This document shows, one piece after another, positions 36,808 through 58,115 of a stretch of DNA of 64,000 nucleotides; within the stretch, counting starts at the first letter, position 1; each line of letters begins with the position of its first letter. The notes beneath the pieces were generated by a model. It was not told the origin of the DNA. It saw nothing but the letters and a program-made list of their open reading frames with translations, and did not search any database. The translations under genes and the position numbers were made by a program. The stretch covers positions 124,001 through 188,000 of the IMG/VR virus record IMGVR_UViG_3300036781_000418; one strand, given 5' to 3'.

Positions 36808-36854
36808 AAGCTAAATAGGGAAGCCCAAAACCCTATTTAACAGGAGATGCCCTT

Positions 36855-43224: not shown

Positions 43225-43303
43225 CCCGGCACCGTTACACCTTCGTCGTTATCCGGTCTCGTAACGGTGTATAATCGGACGTACACACTTACACGAGGGA
43301 CGT

Positions 43304-44167: not shown

Positions 44168-45223
44168 ATGAACCTTCGTACCCTGTTCGCCCTGACCCTA
44201 GCGGTCGCCCTGACCGCCTGCGGTGGAGGTGGTGGATCCGACAACGGATCAACTCCCCCGCCTCCACCGCCTCCCCCACCCGCGCCGACGGCCACGCTGA
44301 CAAGCTCAGCCGCCTACGCGATCGTTGGAACACCCTTCACGCTGACGTGGAGCTCCAACCAAACCGCCTGCACCGGCACGAACTTCACGGCGAGCGCAGC
44401 CTCCGGCACGGTCACCCCGACCCTGACGGCAGGCACCGCCACCTTTACCGTCACGTGCGGCACAGCGACGGCCTCGGTGACCACGAAGGTCCTGCCCGAG
44501 TACACCGCGATTCCGGACGTCGGCTTCCAAGCCGCCCTCATCAACCTCCACGTTCCAGTGAGCGCTGGCCAGGTGAAGACCGCCGACATCGCGGGTATCA
44601 CAAGCATCGTGATGTCCAGCACCCAGAGCCCCACCATGCCTGGCCAAGCGAGCATCGCGGACTACTCCGTCAGCGACCTCACCGGCCTCGCGAACTTCGT
44701 GAGCCTCACCACCCTGTACGCTGAGCACCAGAACCTTGACAACCGCGTGGACTTCTCGCAGAACCCGGCATTGGTCAACCTGCAGCTGTGGGACAACAAG
44801 ATCACCCACCTGGACGTCTCCGCCCTGGTGAACTTGCAGATCCTCGGTACGGGCTGCTTGGACCTCGACGCCCTGGACGTCTCGAAGAACGTCAACATCG
44901 TCGAGCTGGACCTGCAGAACACCGCCACCTGCGTCACCCGCGCACGCACCCTCGACCTCTCAAAGAACGTCAAGCTCCAGCGACTGTACACCCAGTACAC
45001 GCAACTGGCGAGCCTTGACCTCTCGCACAACCCGCTGATGACGGACGTTTGGGTCTCGAACAACCAGCTGACCTACTTGAACCTCAAGGGCGTCGGACTG
45101 CTGAAGATCCTTGACACCCGCAACAACCCTGGCTTGACACAGATTCTCGTGTCCACCCTGCCGCCTGCCAACCAGGCTGGTTACCTCCAAGATCCAGGCC
45201 AGGTCTTCGTGATCGCGCCCTGA
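44168..45223 (+). CDS. Lipoprotein with Ig-like domain and internalin-type LRRs
   Basis: Signal peptide with lipobox LTA|C, Gly/Pro linker, IPDVGFQAALI cap, and LRRs LTGLANFVSLTTLYA / LVNLQLWDNKITHLDVS / LTYLNLKG. Confidence 0.85.
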   Translation: MNLRTLFALTLAVALTACGGGGGSDNGSTPPPPPPPPPAPTATLTSSAAYAIVGTPFTLTWSSNQTACTGTNFTASAASGTVTPTLTAGTATFTVTCGTATASVTTKVLPEYTAIPDVGFQAALINLHVPVSAGQVKTADIAGITSIVMSSTQSPTMPGQASIADYSVSDLTGLANFVSLTTLYAEHQNLDNRVDFSQNPALVNLQLWDNKITHLDVSALVNLQILGTGCLDLDALDVSKNVNIVELDLQNTATCVTRARTLDLSKNVKLQRLYTQYTQLASLDLSHNPLMTDVWVSNNQLTYLNLKGVGLLKILDTRNNPGLTQILVSTLPPANQAGYLQDPGQVFVIAP

Positions 45224-45236: not shown

Positions 45237-45280
45237 TTGCCAACTGGGGTGATAGAGGTACGATGCCTCTATCACCCCAG
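45237..45280 (+). promoter_or_regulatory. Sigma70-like promoter with the -10 box in the loop of a 15-bp inverted repeat
   Basis: TTGCCA-N16-TACGAT; arms ctggggtgatagagg (45244-45258) and cctctatcaccccag (45266-45280). Confidence 0.6.
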
Positions 45281-45289
45281 AGGCATTTC

Positions 45290-46378
45290 ATGGACCACCT
45301 TAAGATCATCTCACAACTCAAGTCGCCAATCATCTGCGCACTGCCGTATGGCTCCAGGCTGTATGGAACCTCAACGCCTTCGTCTGACTACGACTACAAG
45401 GCCGTCTACATGCCCACGCTCCGTACCCTGCTCCTCAACAAGGAGCTGAAGGTGGAGCGAGCTCGCTTCCACGCCGACGGTACCCGAGCCGCGGACGGTG
45501 ACTCCATGACGGCCGACGGCCTGGAGATCGAAAGCTTCTCGATCCACAAACTGTTCCATGACTACGTGCGTGGTCAAGCCTACGCAATGGAGCTCGTGTT
45601 CGCCATGCAGCAAGGCTTCACGTTGACCGACGCGACGCTGACCACCGTGTGGGGCCAGTCGACCATGGCCACGCTGTCCAAGGAGCTGGTCGCCAAGGCA
45701 CCCCACAAGAACGTCTACTCCATGGTCTCCTTCGCGGTGAAGCAGACGATGGACTACGTGCAGCGTGGAGAACGGTTGAAGGCCGCCTCGAACGTGCTGC
45801 GCAAGGTCAAGAACTGGGAGTTGTTGCTCAAGACGAACGGTGCGGTGCCGCGGCTCGACACGATGGTCGCGTACGCGGACGACACTGGGTATGGAATCAT
45901 CACTGAGCGCGTGATCGACAACGTAGCTCGTGCGACCGGGTTGACCATCGGCGAGTCCATGAACCAGTCGAAGAAGATGGACACGCTCAAGCTGAACGGC
46001 CGCGAGTACCTTGAGACGACCCGCTTGGACCACCTCATCGGCGCGCTGGAAAAGTTGGTGGAGAGCTACGGCACACGCACCAACGAGGCCGCCGAGAAGG
46101 ACGTCGACTGGAAGTCGCTGAGCCACGCGGTGCGTGTGTACCAGCAGGTTGAGGAGTTCCTTGACACTGGCTTCATCACGTTCCCACGTGCCAACGTCCA
46201 ACAGTTGATCGACATCAAGGAAGGTCGAACGTCGCTTGAGGACGTGAAGGTCCTGCTACGCGACCTTGACACGCGCATTCACCCGCGTTGTGTCACGCCA
46301 ACTCAGACCGAGATCGCCGAGCTTGACAAGCAAGCCGACGCCATCCTATACAGCTGGGTTTACGAGGCCACGCTGTAG
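45290..46378 (+). CDS. Pol-beta-family nucleotidyltransferase (RlaP-like)
   Basis: YGSRLYGTSTPSSDYDYKAVY and C-terminal KSLSHAVR. Confidence 0.85.
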   Translation: MDHLKIISQLKSPIICALPYGSRLYGTSTPSSDYDYKAVYMPTLRTLLLNKELKVERARFHADGTRAADGDSMTADGLEIESFSIHKLFHDYVRGQAYAMELVFAMQQGFTLTDATLTTVWGQSTMATLSKELVAKAPHKNVYSMVSFAVKQTMDYVQRGERLKAASNVLRKVKNWELLLKTNGAVPRLDTMVAYADDTGYGIITERVIDNVARATGLTIGESMNQSKKMDTLKLNGREYLETTRLDHLIGALEKLVESYGTRTNEAAEKDVDWKSLSHAVRVYQQVEEFLDTGFITFPRANVQQLIDIKEGRTSLEDVKVLLRDLDTRIHPRCVTPTQTEIAELDKQADAILYSWVYEATL

Positions 46379-46810
46379 CGCGTAGATCGTCGCCTTTGGG
46401 CGAATTTCGACGAACTCAGGAATTACGGGGACACGACGACGTTTGATTCGTCCATGTCCACGTAGGTCCGTGGAGAACCCACGGCCAACGAGTCGACGAA
46501 CGTGCGCCAAGGCGAAGGTCTTGTAGATCGGCTGCGTGATCTCGGACAGGCCAAGCTTGGAGAGTTCAAAGGACAACGGGTGTCGTACCCCTGACTGTTC
46601 CCAATCTCCAGCGACGTTGATGAACGCCTCGAGGTCAACGCCTTCCTGCTGCGCAAAGTCAAGGACGTACGCCGTAAGCTCGTCCTCCGTGATGTTGTCC
46701 ACGATGACAAGGTACTGCTCGTGGCGGTGCTCGAGCAGGCTGAGCATCATCATGTTGGCGTTGCCAGTGACGTGTTCAACGATGAGGTTGGAGATCTTCT
46801 TCTTGGTCAT
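46346..46810 (-). CDS. Hypothetical late protein
   Basis: 154 aa with a minus-strand TAAATA at 46835-46840. Confidence 0.7.
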   Translation of the reverse strand: MTKKKISNLIVEHVTGNANMMMLSLLEHRHEQYLVIVDNITEDELTAYVLDFAQQEGVDLEAFINVAGDWEQSGVRHPLSFELSKLGLSEITQPIYKTFALAHVRRLVGRGFSTDLRGHGRIKRRRVPVIPEFVEIRPKATIYALQRGLVNPAV

Positions 46811-46942
46811 GTAGTGCAGGAGTCGGTGTCCTGGTATTTATGGACCCCGGTTGCACCGTAACGATTCTTGAACCTGTTACAGAATCCTAGTGTACTTATC
46901 TCAGGATAAGCGTAGAATTCAACCATGTTCTAGGAGAACGCC

Positions 46943-47296
46943 ATGTTTAAGAATCCACGCCTGTTGATCTTCATCGCCCTCATCATCGTCGTCTGCCGCT
47001 CCCTGTTCGGATCGTGGCGTGCGACGGAGATCGGACAAGGCGCGCACTTCGGAGTTGGAGTGATCATCTTCGGCTTGCTCTTCTTCCTGTGGGCCATCAC
47101 TATGTTCGGGTCGTTCCGAAACGTTGTGATTGTCCTGACCGCCTTCACCGCGGTCGGCGCGACCCTCGTTTTCTGCGCGGCCTTTACCATGGCCTTCGCC
47201 TTTCATATCCTTGGTGGTCAGCCAATCACTGACCCGGACGGTGCCTTCATGACGATGGTCACATTCGCCAAGGAATTCTGGCACTTGGTGTTCTGA
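46943..47296 (+). CDS. Multi-TM membrane protein
   Basis: Very hydrophobic 117 aa with an AGGAG RBS. Confidence 0.65.
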   Translation: MFKNPRLLIFIALIIVVCRSLFGSWRATEIGQGAHFGVGVIIFGLLFFLWAITMFGSFRNVVIVLTAFTAVGATLVFCAAFTMAFAFHILGGQPITDPDGAFMTMVTFAKEFWHLVF

Positions 47297-47297
47297 C

Positions 47298-47708
47298 ATG
47301 ATAATCTACCACGCTTCACCGACACAGCTGGCCAGCTTCGGGCCAACCCCTGCCTGGTTTTCCACTAACACCCGTGACGCCGCGGGTTGGCATAAAGCCG
47401 GTGGCCAGGTGAAAAGCTACACGCACATCTGCACCTTCGCCGGCGTTATCGCGCCGATCACGACCGTGGTTGAGCTCGCCAAGCGGGTGTGGCCGAACGA
47501 CGAGTTCATCTACTCGATGCTGGACCCGCACATCGGCGAGTTTGAGGTGAGCAAGATCGAGGAGTTTGTCCGAGTGCTCAAGGTTGCCGGGTTTGACGCG
47601 GCCTATGTTGAGGACTACGACCCGCACGACTTCGAGCACGGTCGAACCATCAGCATGTGCGTCCTTAACCCGTCGAGCACGGTGCAGGTTCAGATCTTCA
47701 TGGAGTAA
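47298..47708 (+). CDS. ADP-ribosyltransferase-fold-like protein (tentative)
   Basis: IYHAS...F...AWFSTN...A..W and AGFDAAYV...CVLNP resemble the YHG/FFT/GYDG pattern of ART-PolyVal-like domains. Confidence 0.4.
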   Translation: MIIYHASPTQLASFGPTPAWFSTNTRDAAGWHKAGGQVKSYTHICTFAGVIAPITTVVELAKRVWPNDEFIYSMLDPHIGEFEVSKIEEFVRVLKVAGFDAAYVEDYDPHDFEHGRTISMCVLNPSSTVQVQIFME

Positions 47709-47726
47709 CGTACCCTGGTGCGGTGA

Positions 47727-47769
47727 TGTACAACGTGGGGCTGGTGTCTTAAAATGGCACCAGCCCCAC
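47727..47769 (+). promoter_or_regulatory. Sigma70-like promoter with the -10 box in the loop of a 12-bp inverted repeat
   Basis: TGTACA-N17-TAAAAT; arms gtggggctggtg (47735-47746) and caccagccccac (47758-47769). Confidence 0.6.
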
Positions 47770-47784
47770 AACCGTTTACACACC

Positions 47785-49152
47785 ATGAACTTCGCCGACG
47801 TCCTGAAAACCTGTGAACAAGCCAGTGGTGCTGGCTCCAAGAAGGTCATCAAGGAGGCCTTGGGTCGCTTTGACGCGACTTCACGTCGCTTGATGTACTA
47901 CCTGTTCAACCCGTTCTACACGTTCGGCGTCAAGAAGTACGATCAACCAATCTGTCACACGGTCAACGAAAATGACCTGGACACCGCGATCAACGAGCTC
48001 TTCCTGACGCTGGACCAACTCCGCAACCGCGAGCTGACGGGCAACGCCGCCCGCAACGCCGTGACGGACATTCTCGAGCTCTTCACCGAGGACACGGCCA
48101 AGTACATCGCCCGTGTGATCGACAAGGACCCACAAGCTGGGTTCTCCAACGAGACCTACAACAAGGTCTGGCCTGACGATCCAGTGCCAATCTTCTCCGT
48201 GATGCTGGCCGACAAGTTGGCCGTGACGGAGACCGAGGCCGACGACGGTGGTGACGACTTTGACCAGATCGTCTACCCCATCTGGTCGGACGTGAAGTAC
48301 GACGGTGAACGCAACCTCTGCATCGTCAAAGAAACCGACATCACCTACCTGTCGCGCTCGGGCTTGGAAGCCGAGCACATGTACGGCCTGTTCGACGAAG
48401 AGCTCATCAAGATCCGCGCACACCTTGGCTATGACTTCGTGATGGACGGTGAACGGATGGCCGCCTCCTACATCGACACGATCAACGCCAAGAAGTCTGG
48501 CGCTGAGGGTGAGGTTGGTAAGAAGGCCATGCGCTTCCGAGTCTTCTTCATGATGTCGCTTGACAACTGGAACGCTCAGCAGTGCGCCACCACGATGCGC
48601 CAGAACCGTGCCAACCTCACCGCCATCTTCGCGGCCTGTGAGTGCGTCAAGCTGACCCAGACCGTTGGCCGTGAAGTCGTCGACCATGACGACATGATGA
48701 GCCACCTCGACGAGGTCACCAAGCCCGGTTACGACGGCCAGAAGAAAGGCCACGAGGGTTTGATCCTCAAGCAGTACGAAGCCTTGTACTCATGGGACCG
48801 CTCCATGTCATGGTGCAAGGTCAAGAAGTTCTACGAGGTGGACGTTCGCATCATGACCTACGAGATGGGTCGCAAGTCCCTGTCGCACACCATCGGTCGT
48901 GTCAACTACGTCGGCTTCCTTGAAGACGGTCGTCGTGTTGAAGGTGGCGTTGGATCTGGTCTGCGCCTGAAGTCGCGCAACGACGGCGCCCCAACCCGTG
49001 ACGAGCTGCTCGCCAACTGGGAGAAGTACGAAGGTACGACCATGGTGCTGAAGTACCAGGAAGTCTCGAAGGCCAAGGACAAGCAAGTCCTCAGCCTGCG
49101 CTTCCCCACGGTCTTCCGTTTCCGCGACGACAAGATCATCAACGTTGACTGA
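47785..49152 (+). CDS. lig: ATP-dependent DNA ligase
   Basis: VMLA, VKYDGER (adenylated Lys), YLSRSG, VMDGE, EGLILK, WCKVK and SLRFPTV. Confidence 0.93.
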   Translation: MNFADVLKTCEQASGAGSKKVIKEALGRFDATSRRLMYYLFNPFYTFGVKKYDQPICHTVNENDLDTAINELFLTLDQLRNRELTGNAARNAVTDILELFTEDTAKYIARVIDKDPQAGFSNETYNKVWPDDPVPIFSVMLADKLAVTETEADDGGDDFDQIVYPIWSDVKYDGERNLCIVKETDITYLSRSGLEAEHMYGLFDEELIKIRAHLGYDFVMDGERMAASYIDTINAKKSGAEGEVGKKAMRFRVFFMMSLDNWNAQQCATTMRQNRANLTAIFAACECVKLTQTVGREVVDHDDMMSHLDEVTKPGYDGQKKGHEGLILKQYEALYSWDRSMSWCKVKKFYEVDVRIMTYEMGRKSLSHTIGRVNYVGFLEDGRRVEGGVGSGLRLKSRNDGAPTRDELLANWEKYEGTTMVLKYQEVSKAKDKQVLSLRFPTVFRFRDDKIINVD

Positions 49153-49162
49153 GGAGTTTGAC

Positions 49163-49333
49163 ATGAAGTGGGAAGCTATTAGCGGTGCCATCGCCATCTG
49201 TGCCTTCATGGGCATGTTGGCCTATACCGACTCGACCAAGAACAAGGCCGACGCGGAGATCAAAATCTCCTGCAACAACCTGCGGGCCGCCGCCGTTGCA
49301 GCCAGTCAGCCTACCCCGGTCTGCAGCCTGTAA
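49163..49333 (+). CDS. Small exported or membrane-anchored protein
   Basis: GAGGAG RBS, N-terminal hydrophobic helix and two Cys. Confidence 0.5.
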   Translation: MKWEAISGAIAICAFMGMLAYTDSTKNKADAEIKISCNNLRAAAVAASQPTPVCSL

Positions 49334-49466
49334 CACAGAACCTGCGCAAGCTCGGCGACACCAGGGATGACCGGTGTCGCCGATTCGTTTGTGGTGGTAT
49401 GATCAACACCTACGCCGAACGGTTGCAACCGACGACCGCCTGGCACCAACGACCATACAAGAAGAC

Positions 49467-49826
49467 ATGACCGAAGATGAGCTGATCACTGAGGTGAAGC
49501 GCCTGGCCTACGAGCTCCATGTGGTGACCATGGCCCGTGGCAAACTGTACCGGCGCGCCAAAGACTCGTTTGCGCCTGGTGAGGCCAAGCAGATTATCAA
49601 CAAGGTCTGGACTGAGACCTTGAACAACTTCCAGAAGGAAAACAGGCCTGGCTACTTGGTGATCAACGATCCGTCCCTGACGCGGATGATGCCTGAACCG
49701 ACACCTGAGCCGCCAGTCCCCGAGCCAGTGGTTGAGCCAGAACCAGCCGCGCTTGAAGCGCCAACCGAACAACCAGCTGAAGCACCAGTTGAGGAGTCCA
49801 AAGATGACGACCGAAGCAGTCCATGA
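49467..49826 (+). CDS. Hypothetical protein with Pro/Glu-rich tail
   Basis: Start chosen at the internal ATG downstream of a TATGAT box. Confidence 0.55.
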   Translation: MTEDELITEVKRLAYELHVVTMARGKLYRRAKDSFAPGEAKQIINKVWTETLNNFQKENRPGYLVINDPSLTRMMPEPTPEPPVPEPVVEPEPAALEAPTEQPAEAPVEESKDDDRSSP

Positions 49827-50715
49827 TTTTCTGCACTGCGGAATTGACCGCGATGTTTTGAAGGCGCGATGTGACCTAGTCGACCAGCTCATCAACTTCG
49901 TCGACCGTGCTGAGTGCCTGTGGGAACACAGCGGTCAGCGGGGCGGTGGCCAGCAGCGCGTAGCCGAACTTGGAACGTACAAGGACGTCTGTGAAGGCGC
50001 CATGTTCAAGAAGGTTCGACTGCACCAACACCAGCCGGCGCTCATCAAGCACCTGGCTAACGTGAACTCCGTGTTGCACACTCACGAGTTCCTGCGGACA
50101 ACTTGGCGGCGCAACGCCTACTTCCTGTGCCACGAAGACGAGAAGATGGGCAGTCCACCGCTGAACATTCCAGTTGAAGAGCTGAAGCTGTGGGTGTATG
50201 AGTTTGGTCCCGTGCCGTCGCCGAGCTTGAATGCCAACGCGCCGACGGCCGACGTGCTGGGTGCGTTGGGGAACGCCTACCACACGTTCAACGTTTCTCG
50301 ACTTCGAGTTCGTGCGCTGGACGTCATCCGCGACCTGTTGTCAAACGACGACCATTTCAAGTACATTGACGAGTCAATTCGACGCGTTGAGGGTCAAATC
50401 AGGCGAGCGCTCTACGACCAGATGACGGCTCAACTGGTGAACATCAGCATGTTCGGCATGCTGGCTGGTGGAACGCACCTGGCGAAGGCCACACAGTTCC
50501 TCTACAACTTCAACCTGCGGCCACATGGCTCCGTTGGCGTGACGCTCATTCAGTACCTGACGCACGAACATCGTTATCCAGGCTATTGGATGTCTAAGAC
50601 GGAGACTGACCTCCGAGCCGACATCGACAAGCGCTACGCCGCGCGGATCAAGAACTTAAAGGTGGATAAGTTGGCCGACCTTGATGTGCAGCAGGATGGC
50701 GAACGCTCGAGCTGA
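49804..50715 (+). CDS. Hypothetical protein
   Basis: About 303 aa with a GAGGAG RBS. Confidence 0.65.
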   Translation: MTTEAVHDFLHCGIDRDVLKARCDLVDQLINFVDRAECLWEHSGQRGGGQQRVAELGTYKDVCEGAMFKKVRLHQHQPALIKHLANVNSVLHTHEFLRTTWRRNAYFLCHEDEKMGSPPLNIPVEELKLWVYEFGPVPSPSLNANAPTADVLGALGNAYHTFNVSRLRVRALDVIRDLLSNDDHFKYIDESIRRVEGQIRRALYDQMTAQLVNISMFGMLAGGTHLAKATQFLYNFNLRPHGSVGVTLIQYLTHEHRYPGYWMSKTETDLRADIDKRYAARIKNLKVDKLADLDVQQDGERSS

Positions 50716-51060
50716 GTTCTCGGACGCCAGCTCTGGCGTCCGCACCATCATGTCGCCGTACCGTAGCTGAACGATCCAGCCGAGCTGTTCCTTGAACGCG
50801 GTCTCTGGGAAAAAGATCATGGGCTGAACGCCAAGCTTGATCTCAAGCTTGGACAGCTCGTCAAGGCTGTTGATGTAGTTGACCTCGCTGTTCGCGTAGG
50901 ACGACAGCTTCGAGCGGAAGAACTCGTTGATGCGGCCAACCTTGATCACCTGCTCCCATTCACCCATCAGCTCATCACTCATCTGATCGATGAGCTTTGG
51001 GATGTCTTGCGGCGGGGTGGGGGCGCCTGCCTTAGGGAACGCGAAGATCTTAGCTGTCAT
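50656..51060 (-). CDS. Hypothetical protein
   Basis: 134 aa, coupled by ATGA to the phosphoesterase gene. Confidence 0.65.
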   Translation of the reverse strand: MTAKIFAFPKAGAPTPPQDIPKLIDQMSDELMGEWEQVIKVGRINEFFRSKLSSYANSEVNYINSLDELSKLEIKLGVQPMIFFPETAFKEQLGWIVQLRYGDMMVRTPELASENSARAFAILLHIKVGQLIHL

Positions 51061-51869
51061 ACCTCAATTGAAGCCGTTCCGTCGTAGCGGTGGTACTTTA
51101 GATCCACTTCAAAGTGGTAGCCACCTGGGTTGCACAGCACCTGCGTGCGGTACAGCTGTCGGTTGATCGTGTCATGGGTGTGACCGAAGATCCAGTAAGC
51201 GGGCGCGTTGTCGTCCATCATCATCAGACCGCAGTCGGAGGCGAAGCCGCCGTTCATGGAGCTGCCGTGACGCGGGTGGCACAGTGAATGGGACGGCACG
51301 TGGTGGGTCACCACGATCGTCTTGCCGTCGTGCTTCGACGCAAGGGCCAGGCCGATTCGTTCACGGTTTACCTTGTTCATCTCGAACATGTCGCCGGCCG
51401 TGAATAGTTGGGCCGAGTGAACGTCACCGATCGTGATCTCACGGAAGTCCCACATGCCGTTCTGCACTACCAGGGTCTCCAATGGGTTTGAACCGCCGTC
51501 GGCCCAGAGCACGGACATGATGAAACGCACATCGTCGATGTAGACCGTCTTCACGCCCTTGACGACGTACGTGACGTTCGTCAGGGTAGTCCAGGCCGGA
51601 CCCATGATGGCCGCCTCGTACTCGTTCATGTTGTAGCCGTAGAACTCGTGGTTTCCAGCGACCATCAGGACGTGCTTGAAACGCTTCGACAGGACTTCCA
51701 AGACGACCTGCAAGTAGTTGCGCTTGGCGCAGATGTCACCAGCCAGTACCAGGACGGTTGCCTCGTCACCGAGGAGCGTCGGGATGTGGTCCTCAACTAG
51801 GTCGGCGACGGAGCGCTTTTGGCCCACCTTGAACTCAAGGTGGAGGTCGGAGACGTATCGAATCTTCAT
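51057..51869 (-). CDS. Calcineurin-like metallophosphoesterase
   Basis: SDLH, AGDI, AGNHE, VVTHH and WIFGHTH. Confidence 0.92.
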   Translation of the reverse strand: MKIRYVSDLHLEFKVGQKRSVADLVEDHIPTLLGDEATVLVLAGDICAKRNYLQVVLEVLSKRFKHVLMVAGNHEFYGYNMNEYEAAIMGPAWTTLTNVTYVVKGVKTVYIDDVRFIMSVLWADGGSNPLETLVVQNGMWDFREITIGDVHSAQLFTAGDMFEMNKVNRERIGLALASKHDGKTIVVTHHVPSHSLCHPRHGSSMNGGFASDCGLMMMDDNAPAYWIFGHTHDTINRQLYRTQVLCNPGGYHFEVDLKYHRYDGTASIEV

Positions 51870-52039
51870 GATGCTTTCTTGAGCTCGAGCTGGAGTTCCA
51901 TCCAACACTTAAGCTTCTGCTTTAGTTCTACAACGACACCCGGCTTGCTGAGCGCACCTTGGATCGCCGCGAGCTGGAGCTCGGCGATCAGGGCTTCGCG
52001 TCTCGCCACGTACTGGGCGAACAAGTAGATGTTACTCAT
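51866..52039 (-). CDS. Small helical protein (57 aa, below the ORF-track cutoff)
   Basis: MSNIYLFAQYVARREALIAELQL...; downstream of a minus-strand TAAATA (52045-52050) and overlapping the next start (ATGA). Confidence 0.55.
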   Translation of the reverse strand: MSNIYLFAQYVARREALIAELQLAAIQGALSKPGVVVELKQKLKCWMELQLELKKAS

Positions 52040-52157
52040 GCGTATATTTACCCATTTTGGTGGGTTGTGAGTCCCAAATTGAGGTACATGGGTATGAACC
52101 CAACTTGCTACAATTCAAGCTGTTGTTCCACCAAGTCGTGCTCACGCACACCCACTT

Positions 52158-52433
52158 ATGCAAAAGCGTTTTCAAGATCACACCTCCAGCGTGGCGTTGT
52201 ACGCCGTCCTTAACGAGGACGGGACGTACTTCGCGGGGTTTGACCCACTTAAAGGTGAGGCTGTCAAGGTCGTAGACCCACTGAGAGCCAAGCTGTTCAC
52301 CAACAAGTTCAAAGCGTCTCTTCGTCCAGGGGAGCAGCTGGTGGAGCTGCTCGTCACGCTGTCCTTAGACAACACCCACGTCTCCAAACCCTTCCGCCCA
52401 AAGCGTCGGACCGATCCAACTACAACGGAGTAA
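52158..52433 (+). CDS. Hypothetical phage protein
   Basis: 91 aa. Confidence 0.55.
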   Translation: MQKRFQDHTSSVALYAVLNEDGTYFAGFDPLKGEAVKVVDPLRAKLFTNKFKASLRPGEQLVELLVTLSLDNTHVSKPFRPKRRTDPTTTE

Positions 52434-52436
52434 TCC

Positions 52437-52832
52437 ATGTCAAGATACCGTAACGACAACAGTGCCGGCGTTGCTATCCTCGCGGTGCTGTTTATCATCC
52501 TCGCCTTCTGTGGCGTCGTCGGTGCCATTGGCACCGCGATCTACTTCCAGTTCTCAACGATCATGCATGGGGTGCTGGCCCTAACCAACTGGGTGCCAAC
52601 GATGGGGGTCAAGACCGGAATCTTCGTCGGCACCTGCCTCATCATGTTGTACTTCCGAGCGTTGTACACGTTCGGTGGCATGGCGCTGGGTTGGTTCGTG
52701 TTGGGCATGTCCTGGTGGCAACCGCCGTTGATCTTCTTCCCGTTCATCGCCTTCGCCCTCTTCGGTACGTCGCTTCTCGCGGCCGTCACGCTGCTGGGTT
52801 CGGTGGTCGTTGACTTTTTCGATCGGAGATAA
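52437..52832 (+). CDS. Multi-TM membrane protein
   Basis: About four hydrophobic segments. Confidence 0.65.
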   Translation: MSRYRNDNSAGVAILAVLFIILAFCGVVGAIGTAIYFQFSTIMHGVLALTNWVPTMGVKTGIFVGTCLIMLYFRALYTFGGMALGWFVLGMSWWQPPLIFFPFIAFALFGTSLLAAVTLLGSVVVDFFDRR

Positions 52833-52835
52833 TTC

Positions 52836-54173
52836 ATGTCACGTAAGCTAGTTTCAGTCCGCACCATCGACGCGCTGCGCCCGATTCCCGGTGCGGACGC
52901 CATCGAGGTCGCAACCATCGGCGGCTGGGAGCTCGTGGTGAAGCGTGGCGAGTTCGAAGTGGGGGTCCCATGCCTGTACTTCGAGATCGACTCATTCCTA
53001 CCCAAGCACGTTCCGGCCTTCAGCTTCCTAATGACTCGTGGACTGCGCACCTTTGAGGGCGTCGAAGGCCACAAGCTGAAGACGATCCGCCTGCGTGGTC
53101 AGCGTTCGCAAGGCCTGGCCCTGCCGCTTACCATGTTCGCCTTCATGGAGCCGCTGCTCCGCGGTGTCCAAACAACGGACGAGGAGCTGGCCAACTACTG
53201 GCTGCCCGCCGAGAAGATTCCAATGTGGCGGGAGTACTTCTTCGGCATGCACGAGTACGAGGCCGCCCTGGCTCCACAGGACTTTGACTGGGCGCCGATG
53301 TTCGACGTGGTGAAGTGGGAAGTTGAACTGCCCGCCAGCTTGAAGGGTCAGGCCAAGGGCACGTTCCCGTCGTTCATCCGCAAGACGGACCAAGAGCGCT
53401 GCCAGAACATGAAGCAGGAGATCTTCGGTTCCCCTGACGAGACGTACGTGTTTGACGTCTCCACGCTGCCACAGGAGGCGATCGACGCGATGCTCCAGAA
53501 GGGTCACCTCCAAGTGATCAACGGCATCTACCACCGCATCGTGTCGGGGTTGGCTGGCCAAGATCCTGACACCGTGTACGAAGTCACGTTGAAGGTGGAC
53601 GGTTCGTCGTTCACCGCCTACGTCAAGGCCGACGACGATGGCAACGTGGTCACGGGTGTCTGCAGTCGGAACCTTGAGCTGAAGGTGAACGACGAGAACA
53701 AGGACAACGCGTTCGTCAAGATGTTCGTGGAGAGCGGTCTCCAGGCCGCGATGATCGAGATGTACAACAACCCAAACAACCACATTCCGGACGGTCGCCC
53801 ATTCGCGTTTGCGGTGCAGGGTGAGTTGATGGGGCCTGGCATTCAGAGCAACCGTGAAGGCTTCACGGAGAACAAGCTGTTCGTGTTCGACATCTTCGAC
53901 ATCAACCAAGGGTTCTACATGCCGCCGATGTTCCGACACGACGTCGTAGAGGAGCTGCAGAAGTTGGGCGCCAAGCTTGAACACGTGCCGATTCTCGACG
54001 CTTGCGCAAAGCTGTCCGACCTCGGGCTGCACGACATCGCGTCGATCTTGGCCTTCGCCAATGGCCCCAGCATCAACAACCCGGTTCGGGAAGGCGTCGT
54101 CTTCAAGCGCATGGACGGTCAGTTCAGCTTCAAGGCGATCAGCAACCTGTACCTGGAAATGGAGAAGGACTGA
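52836..54173 (+). CDS. ATP-dependent RNA ligase (DRB0094/Rnl5-like)
   Basis: N-terminal IPGADAIE..GGW..VV..YFEIDS; KTDQER, TLKVDGSS (motif I), CSRN, QGEL.GPGIQ.N, FVFDI, REGVVFK and SFKAISN. Confidence 0.92.
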   Translation: MSRKLVSVRTIDALRPIPGADAIEVATIGGWELVVKRGEFEVGVPCLYFEIDSFLPKHVPAFSFLMTRGLRTFEGVEGHKLKTIRLRGQRSQGLALPLTMFAFMEPLLRGVQTTDEELANYWLPAEKIPMWREYFFGMHEYEAALAPQDFDWAPMFDVVKWEVELPASLKGQAKGTFPSFIRKTDQERCQNMKQEIFGSPDETYVFDVSTLPQEAIDAMLQKGHLQVINGIYHRIVSGLAGQDPDTVYEVTLKVDGSSFTAYVKADDDGNVVTGVCSRNLELKVNDENKDNAFVKMFVESGLQAAMIEMYNNPNNHIPDGRPFAFAVQGELMGPGIQSNREGFTENKLFVFDIFDINQGFYMPPMFRHDVVEELQKLGAKLEHVPILDACAKLSDLGLHDIASILAFANGPSINNPVREGVVFKRMDGQFSFKAISNLYLEMEKD

Positions 54174-54313
54174 TGGAACCGAACAAGATGCTCGTTGAGC
54201 TCTTCGGCGGCATTATGGTCAGGCTCGCGATCGTCGCGGCGATCGGTGCCGTGTCCACGTTTGCCTGGATTATCTACGGCCTAGTGCACCTCATCAGGTA
54301 CATCGTGACCTGA
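54173..54313 (+). CDS. Small membrane peptide
   Basis: 46 aa, hydrophobic, overlapping the ligase stop. Confidence 0.45.
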   Translation: MEPNKMLVELFGGIMVRLAIVAAIGAVSTFAWIIYGLVHLIRYIVT

Positions 54314-54328
54314 ACCTAAAACCATTGG

Positions 54329-54368
54329 TGTACACAGCGGGTGAGGTCGTTAAAATGACCTCACCCGC
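54329..54368 (+). promoter_or_regulatory. Sigma70-like promoter with the -10 box in the loop of a 12-bp inverted repeat
   Basis: TGTACA-N16-TAAAAT; arms gcgggtgaggtc (54337-54348) and gacctcacccgc (54357-54368). Confidence 0.6.
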
Positions 54369-54407: not shown

Positions 54408-55061
54408 ATGTGGGACAAACTCAAGGGTTTGGTCATTGAGTCGGATCCGGCCCCCGCCGCGTCCGCACCTCAAGTGGCCGCACCTGGAAAACCGTTGGTG
54501 ACACCAATGGGCAGCACTCCGATCACGTTCACTCCGCCTGGTGTGAACATGGACTTCGTCAACGCGATCAAGAAGGCGATCTTCAGCCGGCCGAGCGCGT
54601 ACCTCACGCTCCTGGAGGCGTCCACGAAGTTGGAGGCCTTCATCGCGGATCCGAACATGCGGATGAAAGCCGCGTGGCAGACTTCGGGTGGTGGTCGCTC
54701 CGCACAGGAAGTCGTGAACGCGGTCACCGCCCACTTGGCGGACGTGGACGGTGAAGAACGCAAGTTCAACGTCGCCGTACAGAACCAGATTCAGACGGCC
54801 GTCGGCACGTTGGTCAACCAAGCCGCCACGCTGCGACAGGACAATGACAACTGCCGCAAGCAGGTCGAACAGCTGACACAGCAGATCACCCAGCTCAACG
54901 ACCGCGTCACGCAACAAGACACGATGGCCTTGCAGCTCGACGGTCAAATCACCGACTCGCGCGCGAAGCTGGATCAGTCCTCCAACGAGTTCAAGGTCGC
55001 CGCACAGGTCGTGCGTGACGAGCTCTCCGCCCACCGCACCACCATCACCTCCACCCTTTAA
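54408..55061 (+). CDS. Coiled-coil protein
   Basis: Pro/Ala linker, small helical domain and a long Gln-rich heptad C-terminus. Confidence 0.75.
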   Translation: MWDKLKGLVIESDPAPAASAPQVAAPGKPLVTPMGSTPITFTPPGVNMDFVNAIKKAIFSRPSAYLTLLEASTKLEAFIADPNMRMKAAWQTSGGGRSAQEVVNAVTAHLADVDGEERKFNVAVQNQIQTAVGTLVNQAATLRQDNDNCRKQVEQLTQQITQLNDRVTQQDTMALQLDGQITDSRAKLDQSSNEFKVAAQVVRDELSAHRTTITSTL

Positions 55062-56191: not shown

Positions 56192-57934
56192 ATGGGAAAA
56201 CTGAAGACACTCCCCAAAGCCATCATCGGACTTATCGTCATCGGTGGTGTCGCTTTCGGAGTCAACACCGCCATCAACAAAGGCTACTTCAAGCAGAAAA
56301 CTGAAGTGGCCGTCCAGGTGCCGGACAAGATCGACGGCCTTGGTGGTGGCATCACCTCCACCGCACCGAAACCGACCGCAACCACAGCCATCAACGTGAT
56401 GGCCGCCACAACGGGTGAGACCCTCCGCGTGAAGACCATTCCGTGGAACGGCACGCTTGGCCTGATGCACGCCCAAGCGTCCGGCGCCTTCCGTGCCCAC
56501 AACCTCAACGTGGACATCAAGCGTGAAGACGACTACTCCAAGATGATCGCCGACATGGCGGCCTTCGCGAAGGATCCGACGCAAGGTGTTCACTTCACGG
56601 TGATCATGGGTGACGGCCTGCCGGCCTACATCATCGGCCTGAACGAGGCGCTCAAGCCCTTCGGTCAGCAGGCTGAAATGATCGCGGGTATCGGCTACTC
56701 GCGTGGTGAGGACAAGTGCGTGATCGCGGACGAGGCCAACCCTCGCGGTGCCCTGATCGCCGGCGTCCTTGGTGACGGCGACATCAACATCTGCATCAAG
56801 TACGCCGCGGACAACGCCATCCCGATCAACGCCAACCCGAAGACCTACGACCCCGACGCCATGAACTTCATGGGCACCGGCTCGTTCGTTGAAGCGGACG
56901 AGAAGTTCATCTCCTCGGCCCGCAACAACTACAAGGGTGGTGCGTGTGAAGAGCGCAAGAACACGAAGACCGGTGACAAGCAGACGGTCTGTGTCACGGG
57001 CTCGGCCACCTGGACTCCCGGTGACGTGAAGGACTTCAGCGAGCTGAAGAAGCTTGGCAAGTCGCTTCGTGTGATCGGCTCTACCAAGGAGTACGCATGG
57101 CAGATGCCAGCCGCGATCATCGGCAACAAGACGTGGATGGCCAACAACCGCCCGACGGTCGAAGCCTTCCTCGCCTCCATCCTTGAATCCGGTGAGAAGG
57201 TCCGCGGTGACAACCAAGCGCTGATGGTCGCCTCCGCCGAACAGGCCAAGGTGATCGGTGAGCAGGACGCTAGCTACTGGGCTGAAATGTTCAAGGGCAC
57301 GACGGACGTTAGCCCCAACGGCAAGACGATTCAGCTTGGTGGCTCCACCACCAACGGTCTCTCGGACGCGGCCTTCATGTTCGGCTTGAACGGAGCGGAC
57401 GACCTCTACTCCAAGGTGTACAACGTGTACGGCAAGATCTCGGTGAAGTACTTCCCCGACCTCATGCCCGGCGGTCTCCGCCCATACGGCGACGTCGTAA
57501 ACAAGTCGTTCATCCAAGCGTTGCTCGCCAAGGCCACCAACGTCGCGCAGGTCGACAAGCCGGTTTACTCCAGCACGACGACTGAAACCTTCGCGGCCAA
57601 GTCGTACGCCATCGAGTTCGAAACCGGCAAGGCCACCTTCTCGCCCTCCGCGGTCAAGGTGCTGAACGACCTGTTGGATCAAGCCGCCGTGACGACGCTG
57701 AACGTGCAGATCAACGGCCACACGGACAACACTGGTGATTCTGGCACGAACATCGGGCTGTCCAAGGACCGAGCCGAAGCGGTGAAGAACTTCCTGATGA
57801 AGAACGCACCGTCCACCTTCACGGCCGAACGTGTCCAAACGCGCGGCTACGGTGACACGCAACCGATCGCGGACAACAACACCGTCGCGGGCAAGGCCAA
57901 GAACCGCCGCGTTGAGGTTATCCTCCGCAAGTAA
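56192..57934 (+). CDS. ABC-type substrate-binding domain fused to a C-terminal OmpA/MotB peptidoglycan-binding domain
   Basis: N-terminal TM anchor and an NMT1/THI5-like body (YSRGEDK, TWTPGD); C-terminal FETGKA, INGHTDNTG, NIGLSKDRAEAV, RGYG and NRRVE. Confidence 0.88.
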   Translation: MGKLKTLPKAIIGLIVIGGVAFGVNTAINKGYFKQKTEVAVQVPDKIDGLGGGITSTAPKPTATTAINVMAATTGETLRVKTIPWNGTLGLMHAQASGAFRAHNLNVDIKREDDYSKMIADMAAFAKDPTQGVHFTVIMGDGLPAYIIGLNEALKPFGQQAEMIAGIGYSRGEDKCVIADEANPRGALIAGVLGDGDINICIKYAADNAIPINANPKTYDPDAMNFMGTGSFVEADEKFISSARNNYKGGACEERKNTKTGDKQTVCVTGSATWTPGDVKDFSELKKLGKSLRVIGSTKEYAWQMPAAIIGNKTWMANNRPTVEAFLASILESGEKVRGDNQALMVASAEQAKVIGEQDASYWAEMFKGTTDVSPNGKTIQLGGSTTNGLSDAAFMFGLNGADDLYSKVYNVYGKISVKYFPDLMPGGLRPYGDVVNKSFIQALLAKATNVAQVDKPVYSSTTTETFAAKSYAIEFETGKATFSPSAVKVLNDLLDQAAVTTLNVQINGHTDNTGDSGTNIGLSKDRAEAVKNFLMKNAPSTFTAERVQTRGYGDTQPIADNNTVAGKAKNRRVEVILRK

Positions 57935-57977
57935 AAGTTACACGCTATGGTCGGGTTCCCTCCCTGACCATCTTTAT

Positions 57978-58006
57978 AGGACGAGTCGAAAGGCTCGTCC
58001 TTTTTT
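57978..58006 (+). terminator. Rho-independent terminator
   Basis: aggacgagtc-gaaa-ggctcgtcct followed by T6. Confidence 0.85.
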
Positions 58007-58024
58007 GACTCGTGAGCACCACCA

Positions 58025-58115
58025 GACGGCGACCGGTTGCACCCGAATATACGATGCACAGAGCACAACACCGTAGCCGGCCAGTGCCTCAGACGTCGCC
58101 TCGTGTCGCCGAACG
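58025..58115. ncRNA. Candidate structured element, copy B
   Basis: Reverse-complement homolog of 34833-34933. cggcgac and gtcgccg can close the domain. Confidence 0.45.

What the first reader, a model, noticed from the sequence alone, without database searches (positions are those of the whole stretch)
45237..54368. Three sigma70-like promoters hide their -10 box in the loop of a perfect 12-15 bp inverted repeat
Seen in sequence: at 45237-45280, 47727-47769 and 54329-54368, a -35-like hexamer (TTGCCA, TGTACA, TGTACA) is followed by a left arm filling most of the spacer, then a 7-11 nt loop containing TACGAT or TAAAAT, then a perfectly complementary right arm. The arm sequences are unrelated between sites, so architecture rather than sequence is conserved. 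None has a U tract, so they are not typical terminators. The downstream genes are the nucleotidyltransferase, DNA ligase and the transport locus. Inference: promoters gated by cruciform or hairpin extrusion (supercoiling- or ssDNA-dependent), or by pairing of the nascent 5' RNA with the non-template strand. Read-through RNA would also display a -10-like loop. A 9-bp inverted repeat abutting TATAAT at 43230-43275 may be a variant.
Basis: partly seen in the sequence, partly recalled or inferred. Interest (0 to 1): 0.62.

Follow-up and report, generated by a model that had tools for sequence, protein, structure and literature searches.

The report
Promoters nested inside RNA hairpins
Three strong stem-loops in a T4-like giant soil phage really do carry a promoter-like -10 box in their loop, but they look like a variant of a trick known from phage T4 (a promoter nested in a hairpin that folds only on RNA arriving from upstream), not a new supercoil-gated promoter.

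Summary
There are perfect inverted repeats of 15, 12 and 12 bp at 45244-45280, 47735-47769 and 54337-54368. Each has TACGAT or TAAAAT in the loop, a -35-like hexamer 16-17 nt upstream, and no U tract.

The window lies in a complete 342.6-kb T4-like phage genome with a Gp23 capsid and a gp55 late sigma. No phage RNA polymerase was detected.

Sites 2 and 3 belong to a promoter class, TGTACA-N16/17-TAnAAT. This class is strand-biased, intergenic and conserved in related giant phages. Site 1's TACGAT is not a hexamer this genome favours between genes, so its promoter status is doubtful.

The predicted start (A, 7 nt after the box) falls inside the 3' arm at all three sites. The promoter's own RNA therefore cannot form the hairpin; only read-through RNA can.

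The same design is common in this genome for the T4-type late motif TAAATA. Fifteen hairpins begin 0-7 nt into the motif, and most end 0-5 nt before a start codon. All 14 that could be scored lie behind a co-oriented gene.

In relatives, 7 of 14 -10-in-loop hairpins bury a leaderless ATG in the 3' arm.

This matches the T4 gene e / soc / 49 / I-TevI principle. Cruciform gating is neither supported nor excluded. No RNA data exist.

The parts
45237..45242 (+). Site 1: -35-like hexamer TTGCCA
   Evidence: It matches TTGACA at 5 of 6 positions and lies 16 nt before TACGAT. In the RNA fold its UGCC pairs with GGCA of the ribosome-binding region, but this extension is not beyond chance.
45244..45280 (+). 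Site 1 hairpin: arms 45244-45258 and 45266-45280 (15 bp, perfect), loop TACGATG with -10-like TACGAT at 45259-45264, predicted start A at 45271
   Evidence: Core RNA energy is -30.7 kcal/mol; DNA energy is -17.2, z -9. TACGAT is not enriched between genes. The last arm base, G45280, is the first G of the GAGG ribosome-binding site. The ATG is at 45290.
45290..46378 (+). Gene downstream of site 1: RlaP-type nucleotidyltransferase (362 aa)
   Evidence: PF10127, 1.3e-9; phrog_388, 7e-43.
44168..45223 (+). Co-oriented upstream gene of site 1 (351 aa, leucine-rich repeats); its stop lies 20 nt before the hairpin
47727..47732 (+). Site 2: -35 hexamer TGTACA
47735..47769 (+). Site 2 hairpin: arms 47735-47746 and 47758-47769 (12 bp, perfect), 11-nt loop with -10 TAAAAT at 47750-47755, predicted start A at 47762
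   Evidence: Core RNA energy is -29.5 kcal/mol. RNA from 47762 onward is unstructured, at -0.9 kcal/mol. The core TGGTGTC-TTAAAATGGCACCA is 21/22 identical to a leaderless promoter elsewhere in the genome.
47785..49152 (+). Gene downstream of site 2: ATP-dependent DNA ligase (455 aa); ATG lies 15 nt after the hairpin
   Evidence: searches (PF01068; phrog_114, 1e-63), and relatives.
47298..47708 (+). Co-oriented upstream gene of site 2 (136 aa, or 99 aa from 47409; no family hit); its stop lies 26 nt before the hairpin
54329..54334 (+). Site 3: -35 hexamer TGTACA
54337..54368 (+). Site 3 hairpin: arms 54337-54348 and 54357-54368 (12 bp, perfect), 8-nt loop with -10 TAAAAT at 54351-54356, predicted start A at 54363
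   Evidence: Core RNA energy is -26.5 kcal/mol. The flanks add -16.2 kcal/mol, which is marginal (p 0.026). The extended stem reaches about 54385.
54408..55061 (+). Gene downstream of site 3: 217-aa coiled-coil protein of unknown function. The ATG at 54408 has a GAAGGGA ribosome-binding site and lies 39 nt after the hairpin.
   Evidence: The homologue in relative G001 aligns from residue 11 of the longer frame, which favours the 54408 start.
54173..54313 (+). Co-oriented upstream gene of site 3: 46-aa hydrophobic ORF overlapping the RNA-ligase stop; its own stop lies 23 nt before the hairpin
43230..43275 (+). GTTACA at 43234-43239 lies 30 nt before the box.
   Evidence: The fold is not significant. 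GTTACA-N30/31-TAnAAT is a recurrent layout.
36812..36839 (+). Example inside the window of the late-promoter version: TAAATA motif forming the 5' arm of a 9-bp hairpin, with an ATG 15 nt after it
   Evidence: genome coordinate 160812.
49352..49383 (+). For contrast: an 11-bp hairpin after the ligase unit, in the ordinary order. A T-rich tail follows, then a -10-like TATGAT about 13 nt downstream.

Best explanation
Each site is a promoter nested inside an RNA stem-loop. The stem-loop acts on RNA, not on DNA.

Proposed mechanism:
- Transcripts that start further upstream run through the co-oriented upstream gene and copy both arms. They fold into a very stable hairpin, with a core of -26 to -31 kcal/mol.
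- That hairpin ends, blocks or silences those transcripts just before the next gene. The possible effects are 3'-end formation, termination, or occlusion of the translation start region.
- Host sigma70 RNA polymerase also binds the TGTACA / TAAAAT promoter whose spacer is the 5' arm and whose -10 box is the loop.
- It starts at the A 7 nt after the box, which lies inside the 3' arm. These transcripts lack the 5' arm, stay unfolded, and express the downstream gene.

Shown here:
- The repeats exist and are far beyond chance.
- The promoter class of sites 2 and 3 is real and conserved.
- The predicted start geometry places the start in the 3' arm.
- The same nested design recurs genome-wide with late promoters.
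- The scorable nested hairpins all occur behind co-oriented genes.
- The phage is T4-like.

Inferred, not shown:
- That the promoters fire.
- The exact start sites.
- Which effect the hairpin has on read-through RNA.

For site 1 the promoter half is doubtful. That hairpin may act on all transcripts.
For: Phage identity:
- The genome has a Gp23 capsid (2e-86) and a gp55 late sigma (phrog_234, 3e-30; T4 gp55 itself 4e-7).
- No sigma70 region 2 or RNA polymerase beta was found, so host polymerase is used.

Promoter class:
- TGTACA-N15-19-TAnAAT occurs 6 times, all + strand and intergenic.
- It occurs 27 times in five relatives against 0 in the control.
- It lies upstream of the ligase in several relatives.
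- There is a conserved A at +12 (45 of 83 boxes) and a pyrimidine at +11 (63 of 83). All three sites have both.
- Fifteen boxes have an ATG opening a long ORF at +11 to +14, mostly +12. These are leaderless candidates and fix where transcription should start.

Folding:
- RNA from the predicted starts folds at only -3.1, -0.9 and -11.3 kcal/mol, no better than shuffles.
- Read-through RNA folds at -42.9, -41.8 and -45.4 kcal/mol, with z of -7.1, -4.8 and -5.4.

Genome-wide parallel:
- Fifteen perfect hairpins of >=8 bp begin 0-7 nt after the start of a TAAATA motif. Few begin elsewhere within +/-60 nt, at most five per 10-nt bin and all 30-60 nt upstream.
- In 10 of the 14 with a start codon found, the 3' arm ends at or within 5 nt of an ATG opening an ORF of 70-1208 aa.
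- 14 of 14 lie in tandem gaps against a 71:25 baseline, giving 0.74^14 = 0.015.

Relatives:
- 14 hairpins of >=8 bp enclose TAnAAT. In 7 of them an ATG at exactly +12 opens an ORF of 156-519 aa and sits in the 3' arm.
- TAnAAT is found in 10 of 232 loops (stem >=9, loop >=6). I estimate about 2 expected from its intergenic density.

Other:
- Sense RNA is 4-7 kcal/mol more stable than antisense at all three sites.
- Precedent: in T4 genes e, soc, 49 and I-TevI/II/III, segB, and mobE of phage Aeh1, read-through RNA forms an inhibitory hairpin. A promoter within its 5' part gives translatable RNA (PMC3014915 section 29; PMC2988022 section 12).
Against: - No transcript data exist. The only public run holding this DNA is the soil metagenome it probably came from.
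- The perfect cores end 9, 15 and 39 nt before the start codons. They therefore do not themselves bury the start sites of the ligase or the 54408 gene.
- The flank pairing that would bury them is no better than shuffled flanks at sites 1 and 2 (p about 0.25) and marginal at site 3 (p 0.026).
- None has a U tract, so efficient intrinsic termination is not expected. The genome's ordinary terminators have 3-5 nt loops and T tails.
- Across all -10 boxes there is no general excess of structure over random intergenic positions.
- The peak of hairpin centres on the -10 box is modest, at 16 against about 9.6 per bin.
- The promoter upstream of site 2 (TGTACT at 46891-46896, TAGAAT at 46913-46918) is of the same class, so no temporal logic follows.
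- Hairpins are not kept at the orthologous gaps of relatives at 40-55% protein identity.
- Arms that are perfect, with no G-U pairs or mismatches, are what a DNA-level role would also predict.
Confidence: 0.55

Rival explanations
1. The hairpins are only 3'-end, terminator or stability elements of the upstream transcription units. The -35/-10 look-alikes are inactive: AT-rich loops that happen to resemble a -10 box.
For: - Each hairpin begins 20-26 nt after the stop of a co-oriented gene.
- Hairpins punctuate every unit boundary in this 10-kb stretch, including an ordinary one at 49352-49383.
- AT-rich hexamers in general are common in loops. TAnAAT is enclosed at 2.15% against 0.4-1.7% for other A/T hexamers.
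- TACGAT at site 1 has no intergenic preference.
- A TTGACA-like hexamer plus TAnnnT occurs 63 times in the genome, 41 of them inside genes.
Against: - Sites 2 and 3 match a conserved promoter class at the -35, spacer, -10 and +11/+12 start context all at once. My estimate of the chance expectation for the -35/-10 pair genome-wide is about 0.15, against 6 seen.
- The site 2 core is 21/22 identical to a leaderless promoter 78 kb away.
- There is no U tract, and the loops are unusually long for terminators.
Confidence: 0.2
2. The inverted repeat extrudes as a cruciform in negatively supercoiled DNA, or as a hairpin in single-stranded DNA, and so switches the promoter. Extrusion could hide it by destroying the -35/-10 spacing, or activate it by presenting the -10 box single-stranded.
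For: - The arms are perfect at 12-15 bp, with an AT-rich centre that would melt first.
- DNA hairpin energies are -15 to -17 kcal/mol.
- Precedents exist. N4 early promoters are extruded hairpins. An N4 hairpin placed between the -35 and -10 of rrnB P1 abolishes activity in a gyrase-dependent way (PMC4496689). The Horwitz and Loeb 1988 cruciform promoter is cited in PMC6060812.
Against: - The loops of 7-11 nt and GC-rich arms are unlike the 5-7 bp stem and 3-nt loop of N4 (PMC4496689).
- No N4- or T7-like polymerase was found, although that control was silent.
- The analogous late-promoter hairpins occur only where read-through RNA can arrive: 14 of 14 tandem against a 74% baseline.
- In 10 of the 14 where a start codon was found, the hairpin abuts or lies within 5 nt of it. 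A DNA switch has no reason to require that.
- There is a sense/antisense folding asymmetry.
- From general knowledge, T4-type DNA replicates as nicked, branched concatemers, which are a poor substrate for stable supercoil-driven extrusion.
Confidence: 0.08
3. The stem-loops are RNA processing or protein-binding sites, for example an RNase III-type cleavage site or an operator for a phage RNA-binding protein that reads the UUAAAAUG loop. They would set the 5' end or the translation of the downstream message.
For: - TTAAAATG occurs 6 times on the + strand and never on the - strand. Two of these are the loops of sites 2 and 3.
- T4 uses loop-specific RNA operators such as gp43, and endonucleases such as RegB (PMC3014915).
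Against: - The other four TTAAAATG copies are ordinary -10 contexts without a comparable stem.
- The site 1 loop differs.
- No candidate binding protein was identified.
Confidence: 0.07
4. Independent terminator-like hairpins and promoters overlap by accident in very short intergenic gaps. The overlap itself has no function.
For: - In this genome, -10 boxes lie before, on the edge of, inside and after hairpins in all registers: 10 after, 5 before, 4 on the 5' arm edge or the arm-loop junction, 2 in the loop.
- Promoters even overlap stop codons.
- Overall hairpin density around -10 boxes is nearly flat.
Against: - Random overlap would rarely give loops long enough to hold a hexamer, because most real hairpins here have 3-5 nt loops.
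- The late-promoter hairpins show a very sharp register.
- In relatives, the start codon sits in the 3' arm in half the cases.
Confidence: 0.05

Closest known systems
T4-type inhibitory leader hairpins with a nested promoter (T4 genes e, soc, 49, I-TevI/II/III, segB; mobE of phage Aeh1)
   Same: - The phage is of T4 type.
- A promoter lies within the upstream part of a stable stem-loop, so its own RNA lacks the 5' arm while read-through RNA folds (PMC3014915, PMC2988022).
- Fifteen late-motif hairpins in this genome match the T4 layout closely.
   Different: - At the three reported sites the promoter is sigma70-type with a -35, not the late TATAAATA type.
- The -10 box sits in the apical loop and the 5' arm fills the spacer.
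- The perfect 3' arm stops 9-39 nt short of the start codon, so burial of the ribosome site, the defining effect in T4, is not shown.
- In relatives the buried element is a leaderless ATG rather than a Shine-Dalgarno site.
Rho-independent terminators directly followed by, or overlapping, the next promoter
   Same: - A GC-rich stem lies 20-26 nt after a stop codon, between co-oriented genes.
- The genome has many terminator-then-promoter pairs within 40 nt.
   Different: - There is no U tract.
- Loops are 7-11 nt, against 3-5 nt in the genome's typical terminators.
- The promoter is inside the hairpin, not after it.
Hairpin promoters of phage N4 virion RNA polymerase
   Same: An inverted repeat is centred on the promoter's recognition element. 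The architecture rather than the arm sequence is conserved.
   Different: - N4 hairpins have 5-7 bp stems and a 3-nt loop with conserved bases. A phage single-subunit polymerase reads them on the template strand with gyrase and SSB (PMC4496689).
- Here the stems are 12-15 bp, the loops are 7-11 nt with a sigma70 -10 box, and no such polymerase was found (weak test).
Cruciform-repressed sigma70 promoters (Horwitz and Loeb 1988; N4 hairpin inserted into rrnB P1)
   Same: An inverted repeat occupies the promoter spacer region of a sigma70-type promoter.
   Different: - Those are engineered or selected constructs with the repeat between the -35 and -10 (PMC4496689, PMC6060812).
- Here the repeat straddles the -10 box and the start site.
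- There is no evidence of extrusion.
Single-strand promoters of conjugative plasmids (Frpo, ssi; own knowledge, not checked here)
   Same: A DNA hairpin is involved in sigma70 promoter function.
   Different: In those, the stem itself re-creates the double-stranded -35 and -10 boxes on transferred single-stranded DNA. Here the -10 box is in the unpaired loop and the -35 lies outside the stem.

Membership tests
T4-type nested-promoter inhibitory RNA hairpin (gene e / I-TevI class) | Phage of the T4 lineage using host RNA polymerase with temporal promoter classes | tested here: met
   - Gp23 at 2e-86.
- gp55 late sigma at 3e-30.
- No sigma70 region 2 or RNA polymerase beta.
- About 100 oriented TAAATA motifs lie 25-45 nt before start codons.
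T4-type nested-promoter inhibitory RNA hairpin (gene e / I-TevI class) | Promoter placed so that its transcripts start downstream of the 5' arm | tested here: inconclusive
   - By the class rule (A at +12), starts fall at 45271, 47762 and 54363, all inside the 3' arm.
- No start site has been mapped.
- The site 1 -10 box is doubtful.
T4-type nested-promoter inhibitory RNA hairpin (gene e / I-TevI class) | The 3' arm sequesters the Shine-Dalgarno site and/or start codon of the downstream gene | tested here: not met
   - The perfect arms end 9, 15 and 39 nt before the ATGs. Only the first G of the site 1 GAGG is in the arm.
- The minimum-energy folds extend to the ribosome site (site 1) and to nucleotide -1 (site 2), but these extensions are no better than shuffled flanks (p 0.27 and 0.23; site 3 p 0.026).
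- The feature is met elsewhere: in most of the late-type hairpins (10 of 14 within 5 nt of the ATG) and in 7 of 14 hairpins in relatives.
T4-type nested-promoter inhibitory RNA hairpin (gene e / I-TevI class) | Read-through transcription from an upstream co-oriented unit | tested here: met
   - There are co-oriented upstream genes at all three sites.
- All scored nested hairpins are in tandem gaps.
- The existence of the transcripts themselves is not testable here.
T4-type nested-promoter inhibitory RNA hairpin (gene e / I-TevI class) | Lower translation from long transcripts than from promoter-proximal transcripts | not testable with these tools
   This needs reporter, toeprint or ribosome-profiling data.
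Intrinsic (Rho-independent) terminator | GC-rich stem with a short loop just downstream of a gene | tested here: met
   - Stems of 12-15 bp lie 20-26 nt after stop codons.
- The loops of 7, 11 and 8 nt are long, although folding shrinks two of them to 3-5 nt.
Intrinsic (Rho-independent) terminator | U-rich tract immediately after the stem | tested here: not met
   - The tails are AGAGGCAT, AACCGTTT and ACATGTAT.
- None passes the scanner's rule of 5 T in 8.
Clade-specific sigma70-type promoter TGTACA-N16/17-TAnAAT | TGTACA at -35, a 16-17 nt spacer, TAnAAT at -10, pyrimidine-A at +11/+12, intergenic and gene-oriented | tested here: met
   - Sites 2 and 3 meet every element.
- The class is conserved in relatives.
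- Site 1 meets only the spacing and the +11/+12 element. TTGCCA and TACGAT are not this class.
N4-type extruded hairpin promoter | 5-7 bp stem and 3-nt loop with conserved bases, read by a phage-encoded single-subunit virion RNA polymerase | tested here: not met
   - Stems are 12-15 bp and loops 7-11 nt.
- PF00940 gave no hit, but its control genomes were also silent, so the polymerase part is inconclusive.
- The defining features are taken from PMC4496689.
Supercoil-driven cruciform switch at a sigma70 promoter | Extrusion at physiological superhelical density that changes promoter output | not testable with these tools
   Only DNA hairpin energies could be computed, at -15 to -17 kcal/mol. 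Probing and topology-dependent transcription assays are needed.

The most novel reading that the evidence does not exclude
In this clade of giant T4-like soil phages, hairpins that straddle the -10 box may form a distinct switch for sigma70-type promoters, many of them leaderless.

The same inverted repeat would work twice. As RNA it would silence every read-through copy of the gene, burying a 5'-less AUG or blocking the leader. As DNA it would make the nested promoter sensitive to template topology or melting.

Expression of repair genes (nucleotidyltransferase, DNA ligase) would then be confined to transcripts born at that promoter under particular DNA states.
Probability: 0.1. Interest if true: 0.6.

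Novelty: new variant of a known kind. Interest (0 to 1): 0.33.

Why it matters
If the nested promoters fire as predicted, this uncultured 342-kb phage uses a T4 principle on a large scale. That principle is that only RNA born at the proximal promoter is usable.

The scale here is at least 15 late promoters plus the sigma70-type sites. The principle is also extended to early or middle-type promoters and, in relatives, to leaderless genes.

This gives a sequence-only rule for finding transcription-unit boundaries and promoter classes in uncultured T4-like giant phages.

It also offers compact natural insulator-plus-promoter parts of about 60 bp.

It does not reveal a new kind of promoter control. 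The supercoil-gating idea remains untested.

Tried and rejected
- RNA evidence: the one search for sequencing runs found only a DNA run, a soil metagenome that is probably the source. Read laying was therefore not used, because contigs cannot show RNA ends.
- Covariation at the same sites: no relative closer than 55% ligase identity exists in viral contigs or metagenome contigs. The protein after site 3 found nothing in viral contigs. The phage collection gave only a 99-bp match.
- Orthologous gaps in four relatives: the hairpins are not kept upstream of the nucleotidyltransferase or the 54408-gene homologues. The ligase promoter is kept, but with different or no repeats.
- Extended stems burying the ribosome site: they are seen in minimum-energy folds but rejected as evidence, because shuffled flanks do as well at sites 1 and 2.
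- General rule that -10 boxes sit in structure: rejected. Mean cross-pairing and energy gain equal those of random intergenic positions.
- My first naive estimate of the chance of a repeat enclosing a -10 box (0.003 per promoter) was too low. Other A/T hexamers are enclosed at 0.4-1.7%, so the enrichment is about 2-5 fold, not 100-fold.
- Tandem-gap test in relatives: 9 of 9 are tandem, but the baseline is 91%, so it is uninformative.
- AsiA (PF09010) and T7-type polymerase (PF00940): no hits, but the controls were silent too, so absence is not shown.
- An in-loop AUG as a start codon: the loop ATGs at 47753 and 54355 are out of frame with the downstream genes (read).

Full report
**1. The observation**

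I read the four places directly and ran two repeat scans.

| Site | Arms | Arm length | Loop | -35-like hexamer | Spacer |
|---|---|---|---|---|---|
| 1 | 45244-45258 / 45266-45280 | 15 bp | TACGATG | TTGCCA 45237-45242 | 16 nt |
| 2 | 47735-47746 / 47758-47769 | 12 bp | 11 nt, holds TAAAAT | TGTACA 47727-47732 | 17 nt |
| 3 | 54337-54348 / 54357-54368 | 12 bp | 8 nt, holds TAAAAT | TGTACA 54329-54334 | 16 nt |

The consensus scanner lists all three as sigma70-like and none as terminator-like.

The window is bases 124001-188000 of a single 342,591-bp virus record. The record has direct terminal repeats and is rated complete. That genome holds 23 perfect repeats of >=12 bp, against 0-1 in shuffled genomes. 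Only these three of the 59 repeats of >=10 bp have TAnnnT in the loop.

**2. What the genome is**

- It encodes a T4 Gp23-type capsid protein (2e-86).
- It encodes a homologue of the T4 late sigma gp55.
- It shows no sigma70 region 2 and no RNA polymerase beta subunit. A T7-type polymerase search also gave no hit, but its control genomes were silent, so that absence is not shown.
- It is therefore a giant T4-like phage that should use host polymerase.
- Its source is a soil metagenome, and no RNA run holds it.
- The genes after sites 1 and 2 are an RlaP-type nucleotidyltransferase and an ATP-dependent DNA ligase.
- The gene after site 3 is a 217-aa coiled-coil protein. An OmpA-domain protein, an ABC ATPase and a binding protein follow 2-7 kb further on.

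**3. The genome's own promoter vocabulary**

A crude gene call gave 420 genes. K-mer enrichment between genes showed two oriented motifs.

*The late motif.* The dominant motif is (C/G)TAAATA(G). There are about 100 copies, lying 25-45 nt before start codons on whichever strand the gene is on. In a phage with gp55 this is the counterpart of the T4 late promoter TATAAATA (PMC3014915).

*The sigma70-type motif.* The second motif is TAnAAT.
- There are 97 intergenic copies, 83 of them on the + strand.
- It is 61-81% intergenic against a 17.8% background.
- It is followed by a pyrimidine at +11 and an A at +12, counted from the first T of the box.
- In 15 cases an ATG at +11 to +14, mostly +12, opens a long ORF. 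These are leaderless candidates and mark where transcription should begin.

*The subclass with a -35.* A subset carries TGTACA 16-17 nt upstream.
- There are six copies, all on the + strand and intergenic. Two of them are sites 2 and 3.
- The same pattern occurs 27 times in five related phage records, strongly strand-biased. It never occurs in the reversed-pattern control.
- It precedes the ligase gene in several relatives.

Sites 2 and 3 are therefore good promoter candidates. Site 1 is not: TACGAT is 19% intergenic, which is background. TTGACA-like plus TAnnnT pairs are common inside genes.

**4. Geometry**

With the +12 rule the starts fall at 45271, 47762 and 54363. These are the 5th to 7th base of the 3' arm.

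- RNA from those points is essentially unstructured: -3.1, -0.9 and -11.3 kcal/mol, no better than shuffles.
- RNA that enters from upstream folds at -42.9, -41.8 and -45.4 kcal/mol, with z of -7.1, -4.8 and -5.4.

So the hairpin can exist only on read-through RNA.

**5. The same design elsewhere in the genome**

- Fifteen perfect hairpins of >=8 bp begin 0-7 nt after the start of a TAAATA motif. Few begin elsewhere within 60 nt on either side; at most five fall in any other 10-nt bin.
- For 10 of the 14 where a start codon was found, the 3' arm ends at or within 5 nt of an ATG opening an ORF of 70-1208 aa.
- Several have a U tail that is simply the complement of the motif's A run.
- A T4-type late start about 6 nt after the motif (own knowledge) would lie at the end of the 5' arm.
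- All 14 that could be scored lie behind a co-oriented gene, although 25 of 96 late motifs lie in divergent gaps (0.74^14 = 0.015).
- Relative G002 has seven such hairpins and G005 three.

**6. The sigma70-type version in relatives**

Whole records of four relatives were fetched.
- Fourteen hairpins of >=8 bp enclose a TAnAAT box.
- In seven of them an ATG at exactly +12 opens an ORF of 156-519 aa and lies in the 3' arm. Read-through RNA would bury that start codon, while the promoter's own RNA would begin with it.
- Leaderless boxes are 8% of all boxes (97 of 1226). The excess is real but less striking if only true promoters are counted.
- The enrichment of TAnAAT in loops is moderate. It appears in 10 of 232 loops (stem >=9, loop >=6) against about 2 expected from its intergenic density. 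It is enclosed at 2.15% against 0.4-1.7% for other A/T hexamers. The positional peak is 16 against about 9.6 per bin.

**7. Comparison with what is known**

T4 genes e, soc, 49, the intron endonucleases I-TevI/II/III, segB, and mobE of phage Aeh1 have a stable RNA structure that hides the ribosome site on transcripts from upstream promoters. A promoter in the 5' part of that structure gives transcripts that lack the inhibitory arm (PMC3014915 section 29; PMC2988022 section 12).

The late-type hairpins of this genome match that description. The three reported sites work like it in geometry but fail one defining feature:
- Their perfect 3' arms stop 9, 15 and 39 nt before the start codons.
- The flank pairing that reaches the ribosome site (site 1) or nucleotide -1 (site 2) is no better than shuffled flanks.

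They also fail the U-tract feature of intrinsic terminators. I therefore describe them as a variant that works like the T4 class. What they do to read-through RNA remains open; the options are 3'-end formation, a block, or occlusion.

**8. The cruciform idea**

Precedents exist. N4 early promoters are extruded hairpins. A hairpin placed between the -35 and -10 of rrnB P1 silences it in a gyrase-dependent way (PMC4496689). The Horwitz and Loeb promoter is cited in PMC6060812.

- In favour here: the arms are perfect and the centre is AT-rich. DNA hairpins fold at -15 to -17 kcal/mol.
- Against: the tandem-only distribution, the way most late-type hairpins abut start codons, the sense/antisense asymmetry of 4-7 kcal/mol, and stems and loops unlike those of N4.
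- It cannot be excluded without probing.

**9. Limits**

- No transcript data exist.
- No relative is close enough for covariation.
- The hairpins are not kept at orthologous gaps of distant relatives.
- There is no general excess of structure at -10 boxes.
- The promoter upstream of site 2 is of the same class, so no temporal logic can be inferred.
- The gene calls are my own crude ones.

**10. Verdict**

- The promoter reading is supported for two of the three sites.
- The gating mechanism is not supported.
- The most likely explanation is an RNA-level nested-promoter hairpin, a variant of a known T4 device.
- Interest is modest.

Noticed in passing
whole genome; in the window e.g. 36812-36839; genome coordinates 44168, 90701(-), 104912(-), 118102, 239702, 252885, 281106(-): Fifteen hairpins start 0-7 nt into the late-promoter motif TAAATA, and most end 0-5 nt before a start codon. 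In several, the U tail of the hairpin is the complement of the motif's A run, so promoter and terminator share the same bases.
   Followed up: yes
window 43234-43275 and about 46877-46918; genome-wide, and in relatives G001 and G005: There is a three-part promoter layout. (C)GTTACA sits at a fixed 30-31 nt before the TAnAAT box, with a TGTACA- or TTTACA-like -35 in between. G001 also has a second mode at 20-21 nt. GTTAC/GTAAC also forms the arms of several hairpins. This may be a site for a phage transcription factor.
   Followed up: partly
genome-wide; in the window the -10 boxes at 9027, 20271 and 32235: There are fifteen candidate leaderless genes in this phage (TAnAAT, then ATG or GTG at +11 to +14, mostly ATG at +12, opening ORFs of 59-519 aa). 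Relatives have 10-36 each. This is unusual for a T4-like phage and may be a hint about the unknown host.
   Followed up: partly
genome-wide, e.g. genome 234, 19247, 22457, 118790, 129712: [quoted passage not shown]
   Followed up: no
window 54173-54313: A 46-aa hydrophobic ORF has its ATG overlapping the RNA-ligase stop codon (TGATG). My gene caller missed it. It is the gene directly upstream of site 3.
   Followed up: partly
window 45290-54173: There is a cluster of nucleic-acid repair genes: an RlaP-type nucleotidyltransferase, an ATP-dependent DNA ligase, a metallophosphoesterase on the minus strand (51057-51908), and an RNA ligase with a PHA02142 OB domain (52836-54173). The order is kept in four relatives.
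   Followed up: partly
window 56192-62050: A 580-aa protein with a C-terminal OmpA domain, an ABC-transporter ATPase (59368-60162) and an NMT1-like substrate-binding protein (61160-62050) are encoded by a phage.
   Followed up: no
genome 249553-249575 compared with window 47742-47762: The core of site 2 (TGGTGTC-TTAAAATGGCACCA) is 21/22 identical to a leaderless promoter 78 kb away. That promoter has a short imperfect hairpin burying its ATG. Promoter cassettes may have been copied within the genome.
   Followed up: partly
relative G002 (L052-L068), ligase region 89727-92074: The ligase homologue matches in two pieces about 950 bp apart (query residues 2-182 and 186-452). This suggests an insertion, such as an intron or a homing-endonuclease gene, in that relative.
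   Followed up: no
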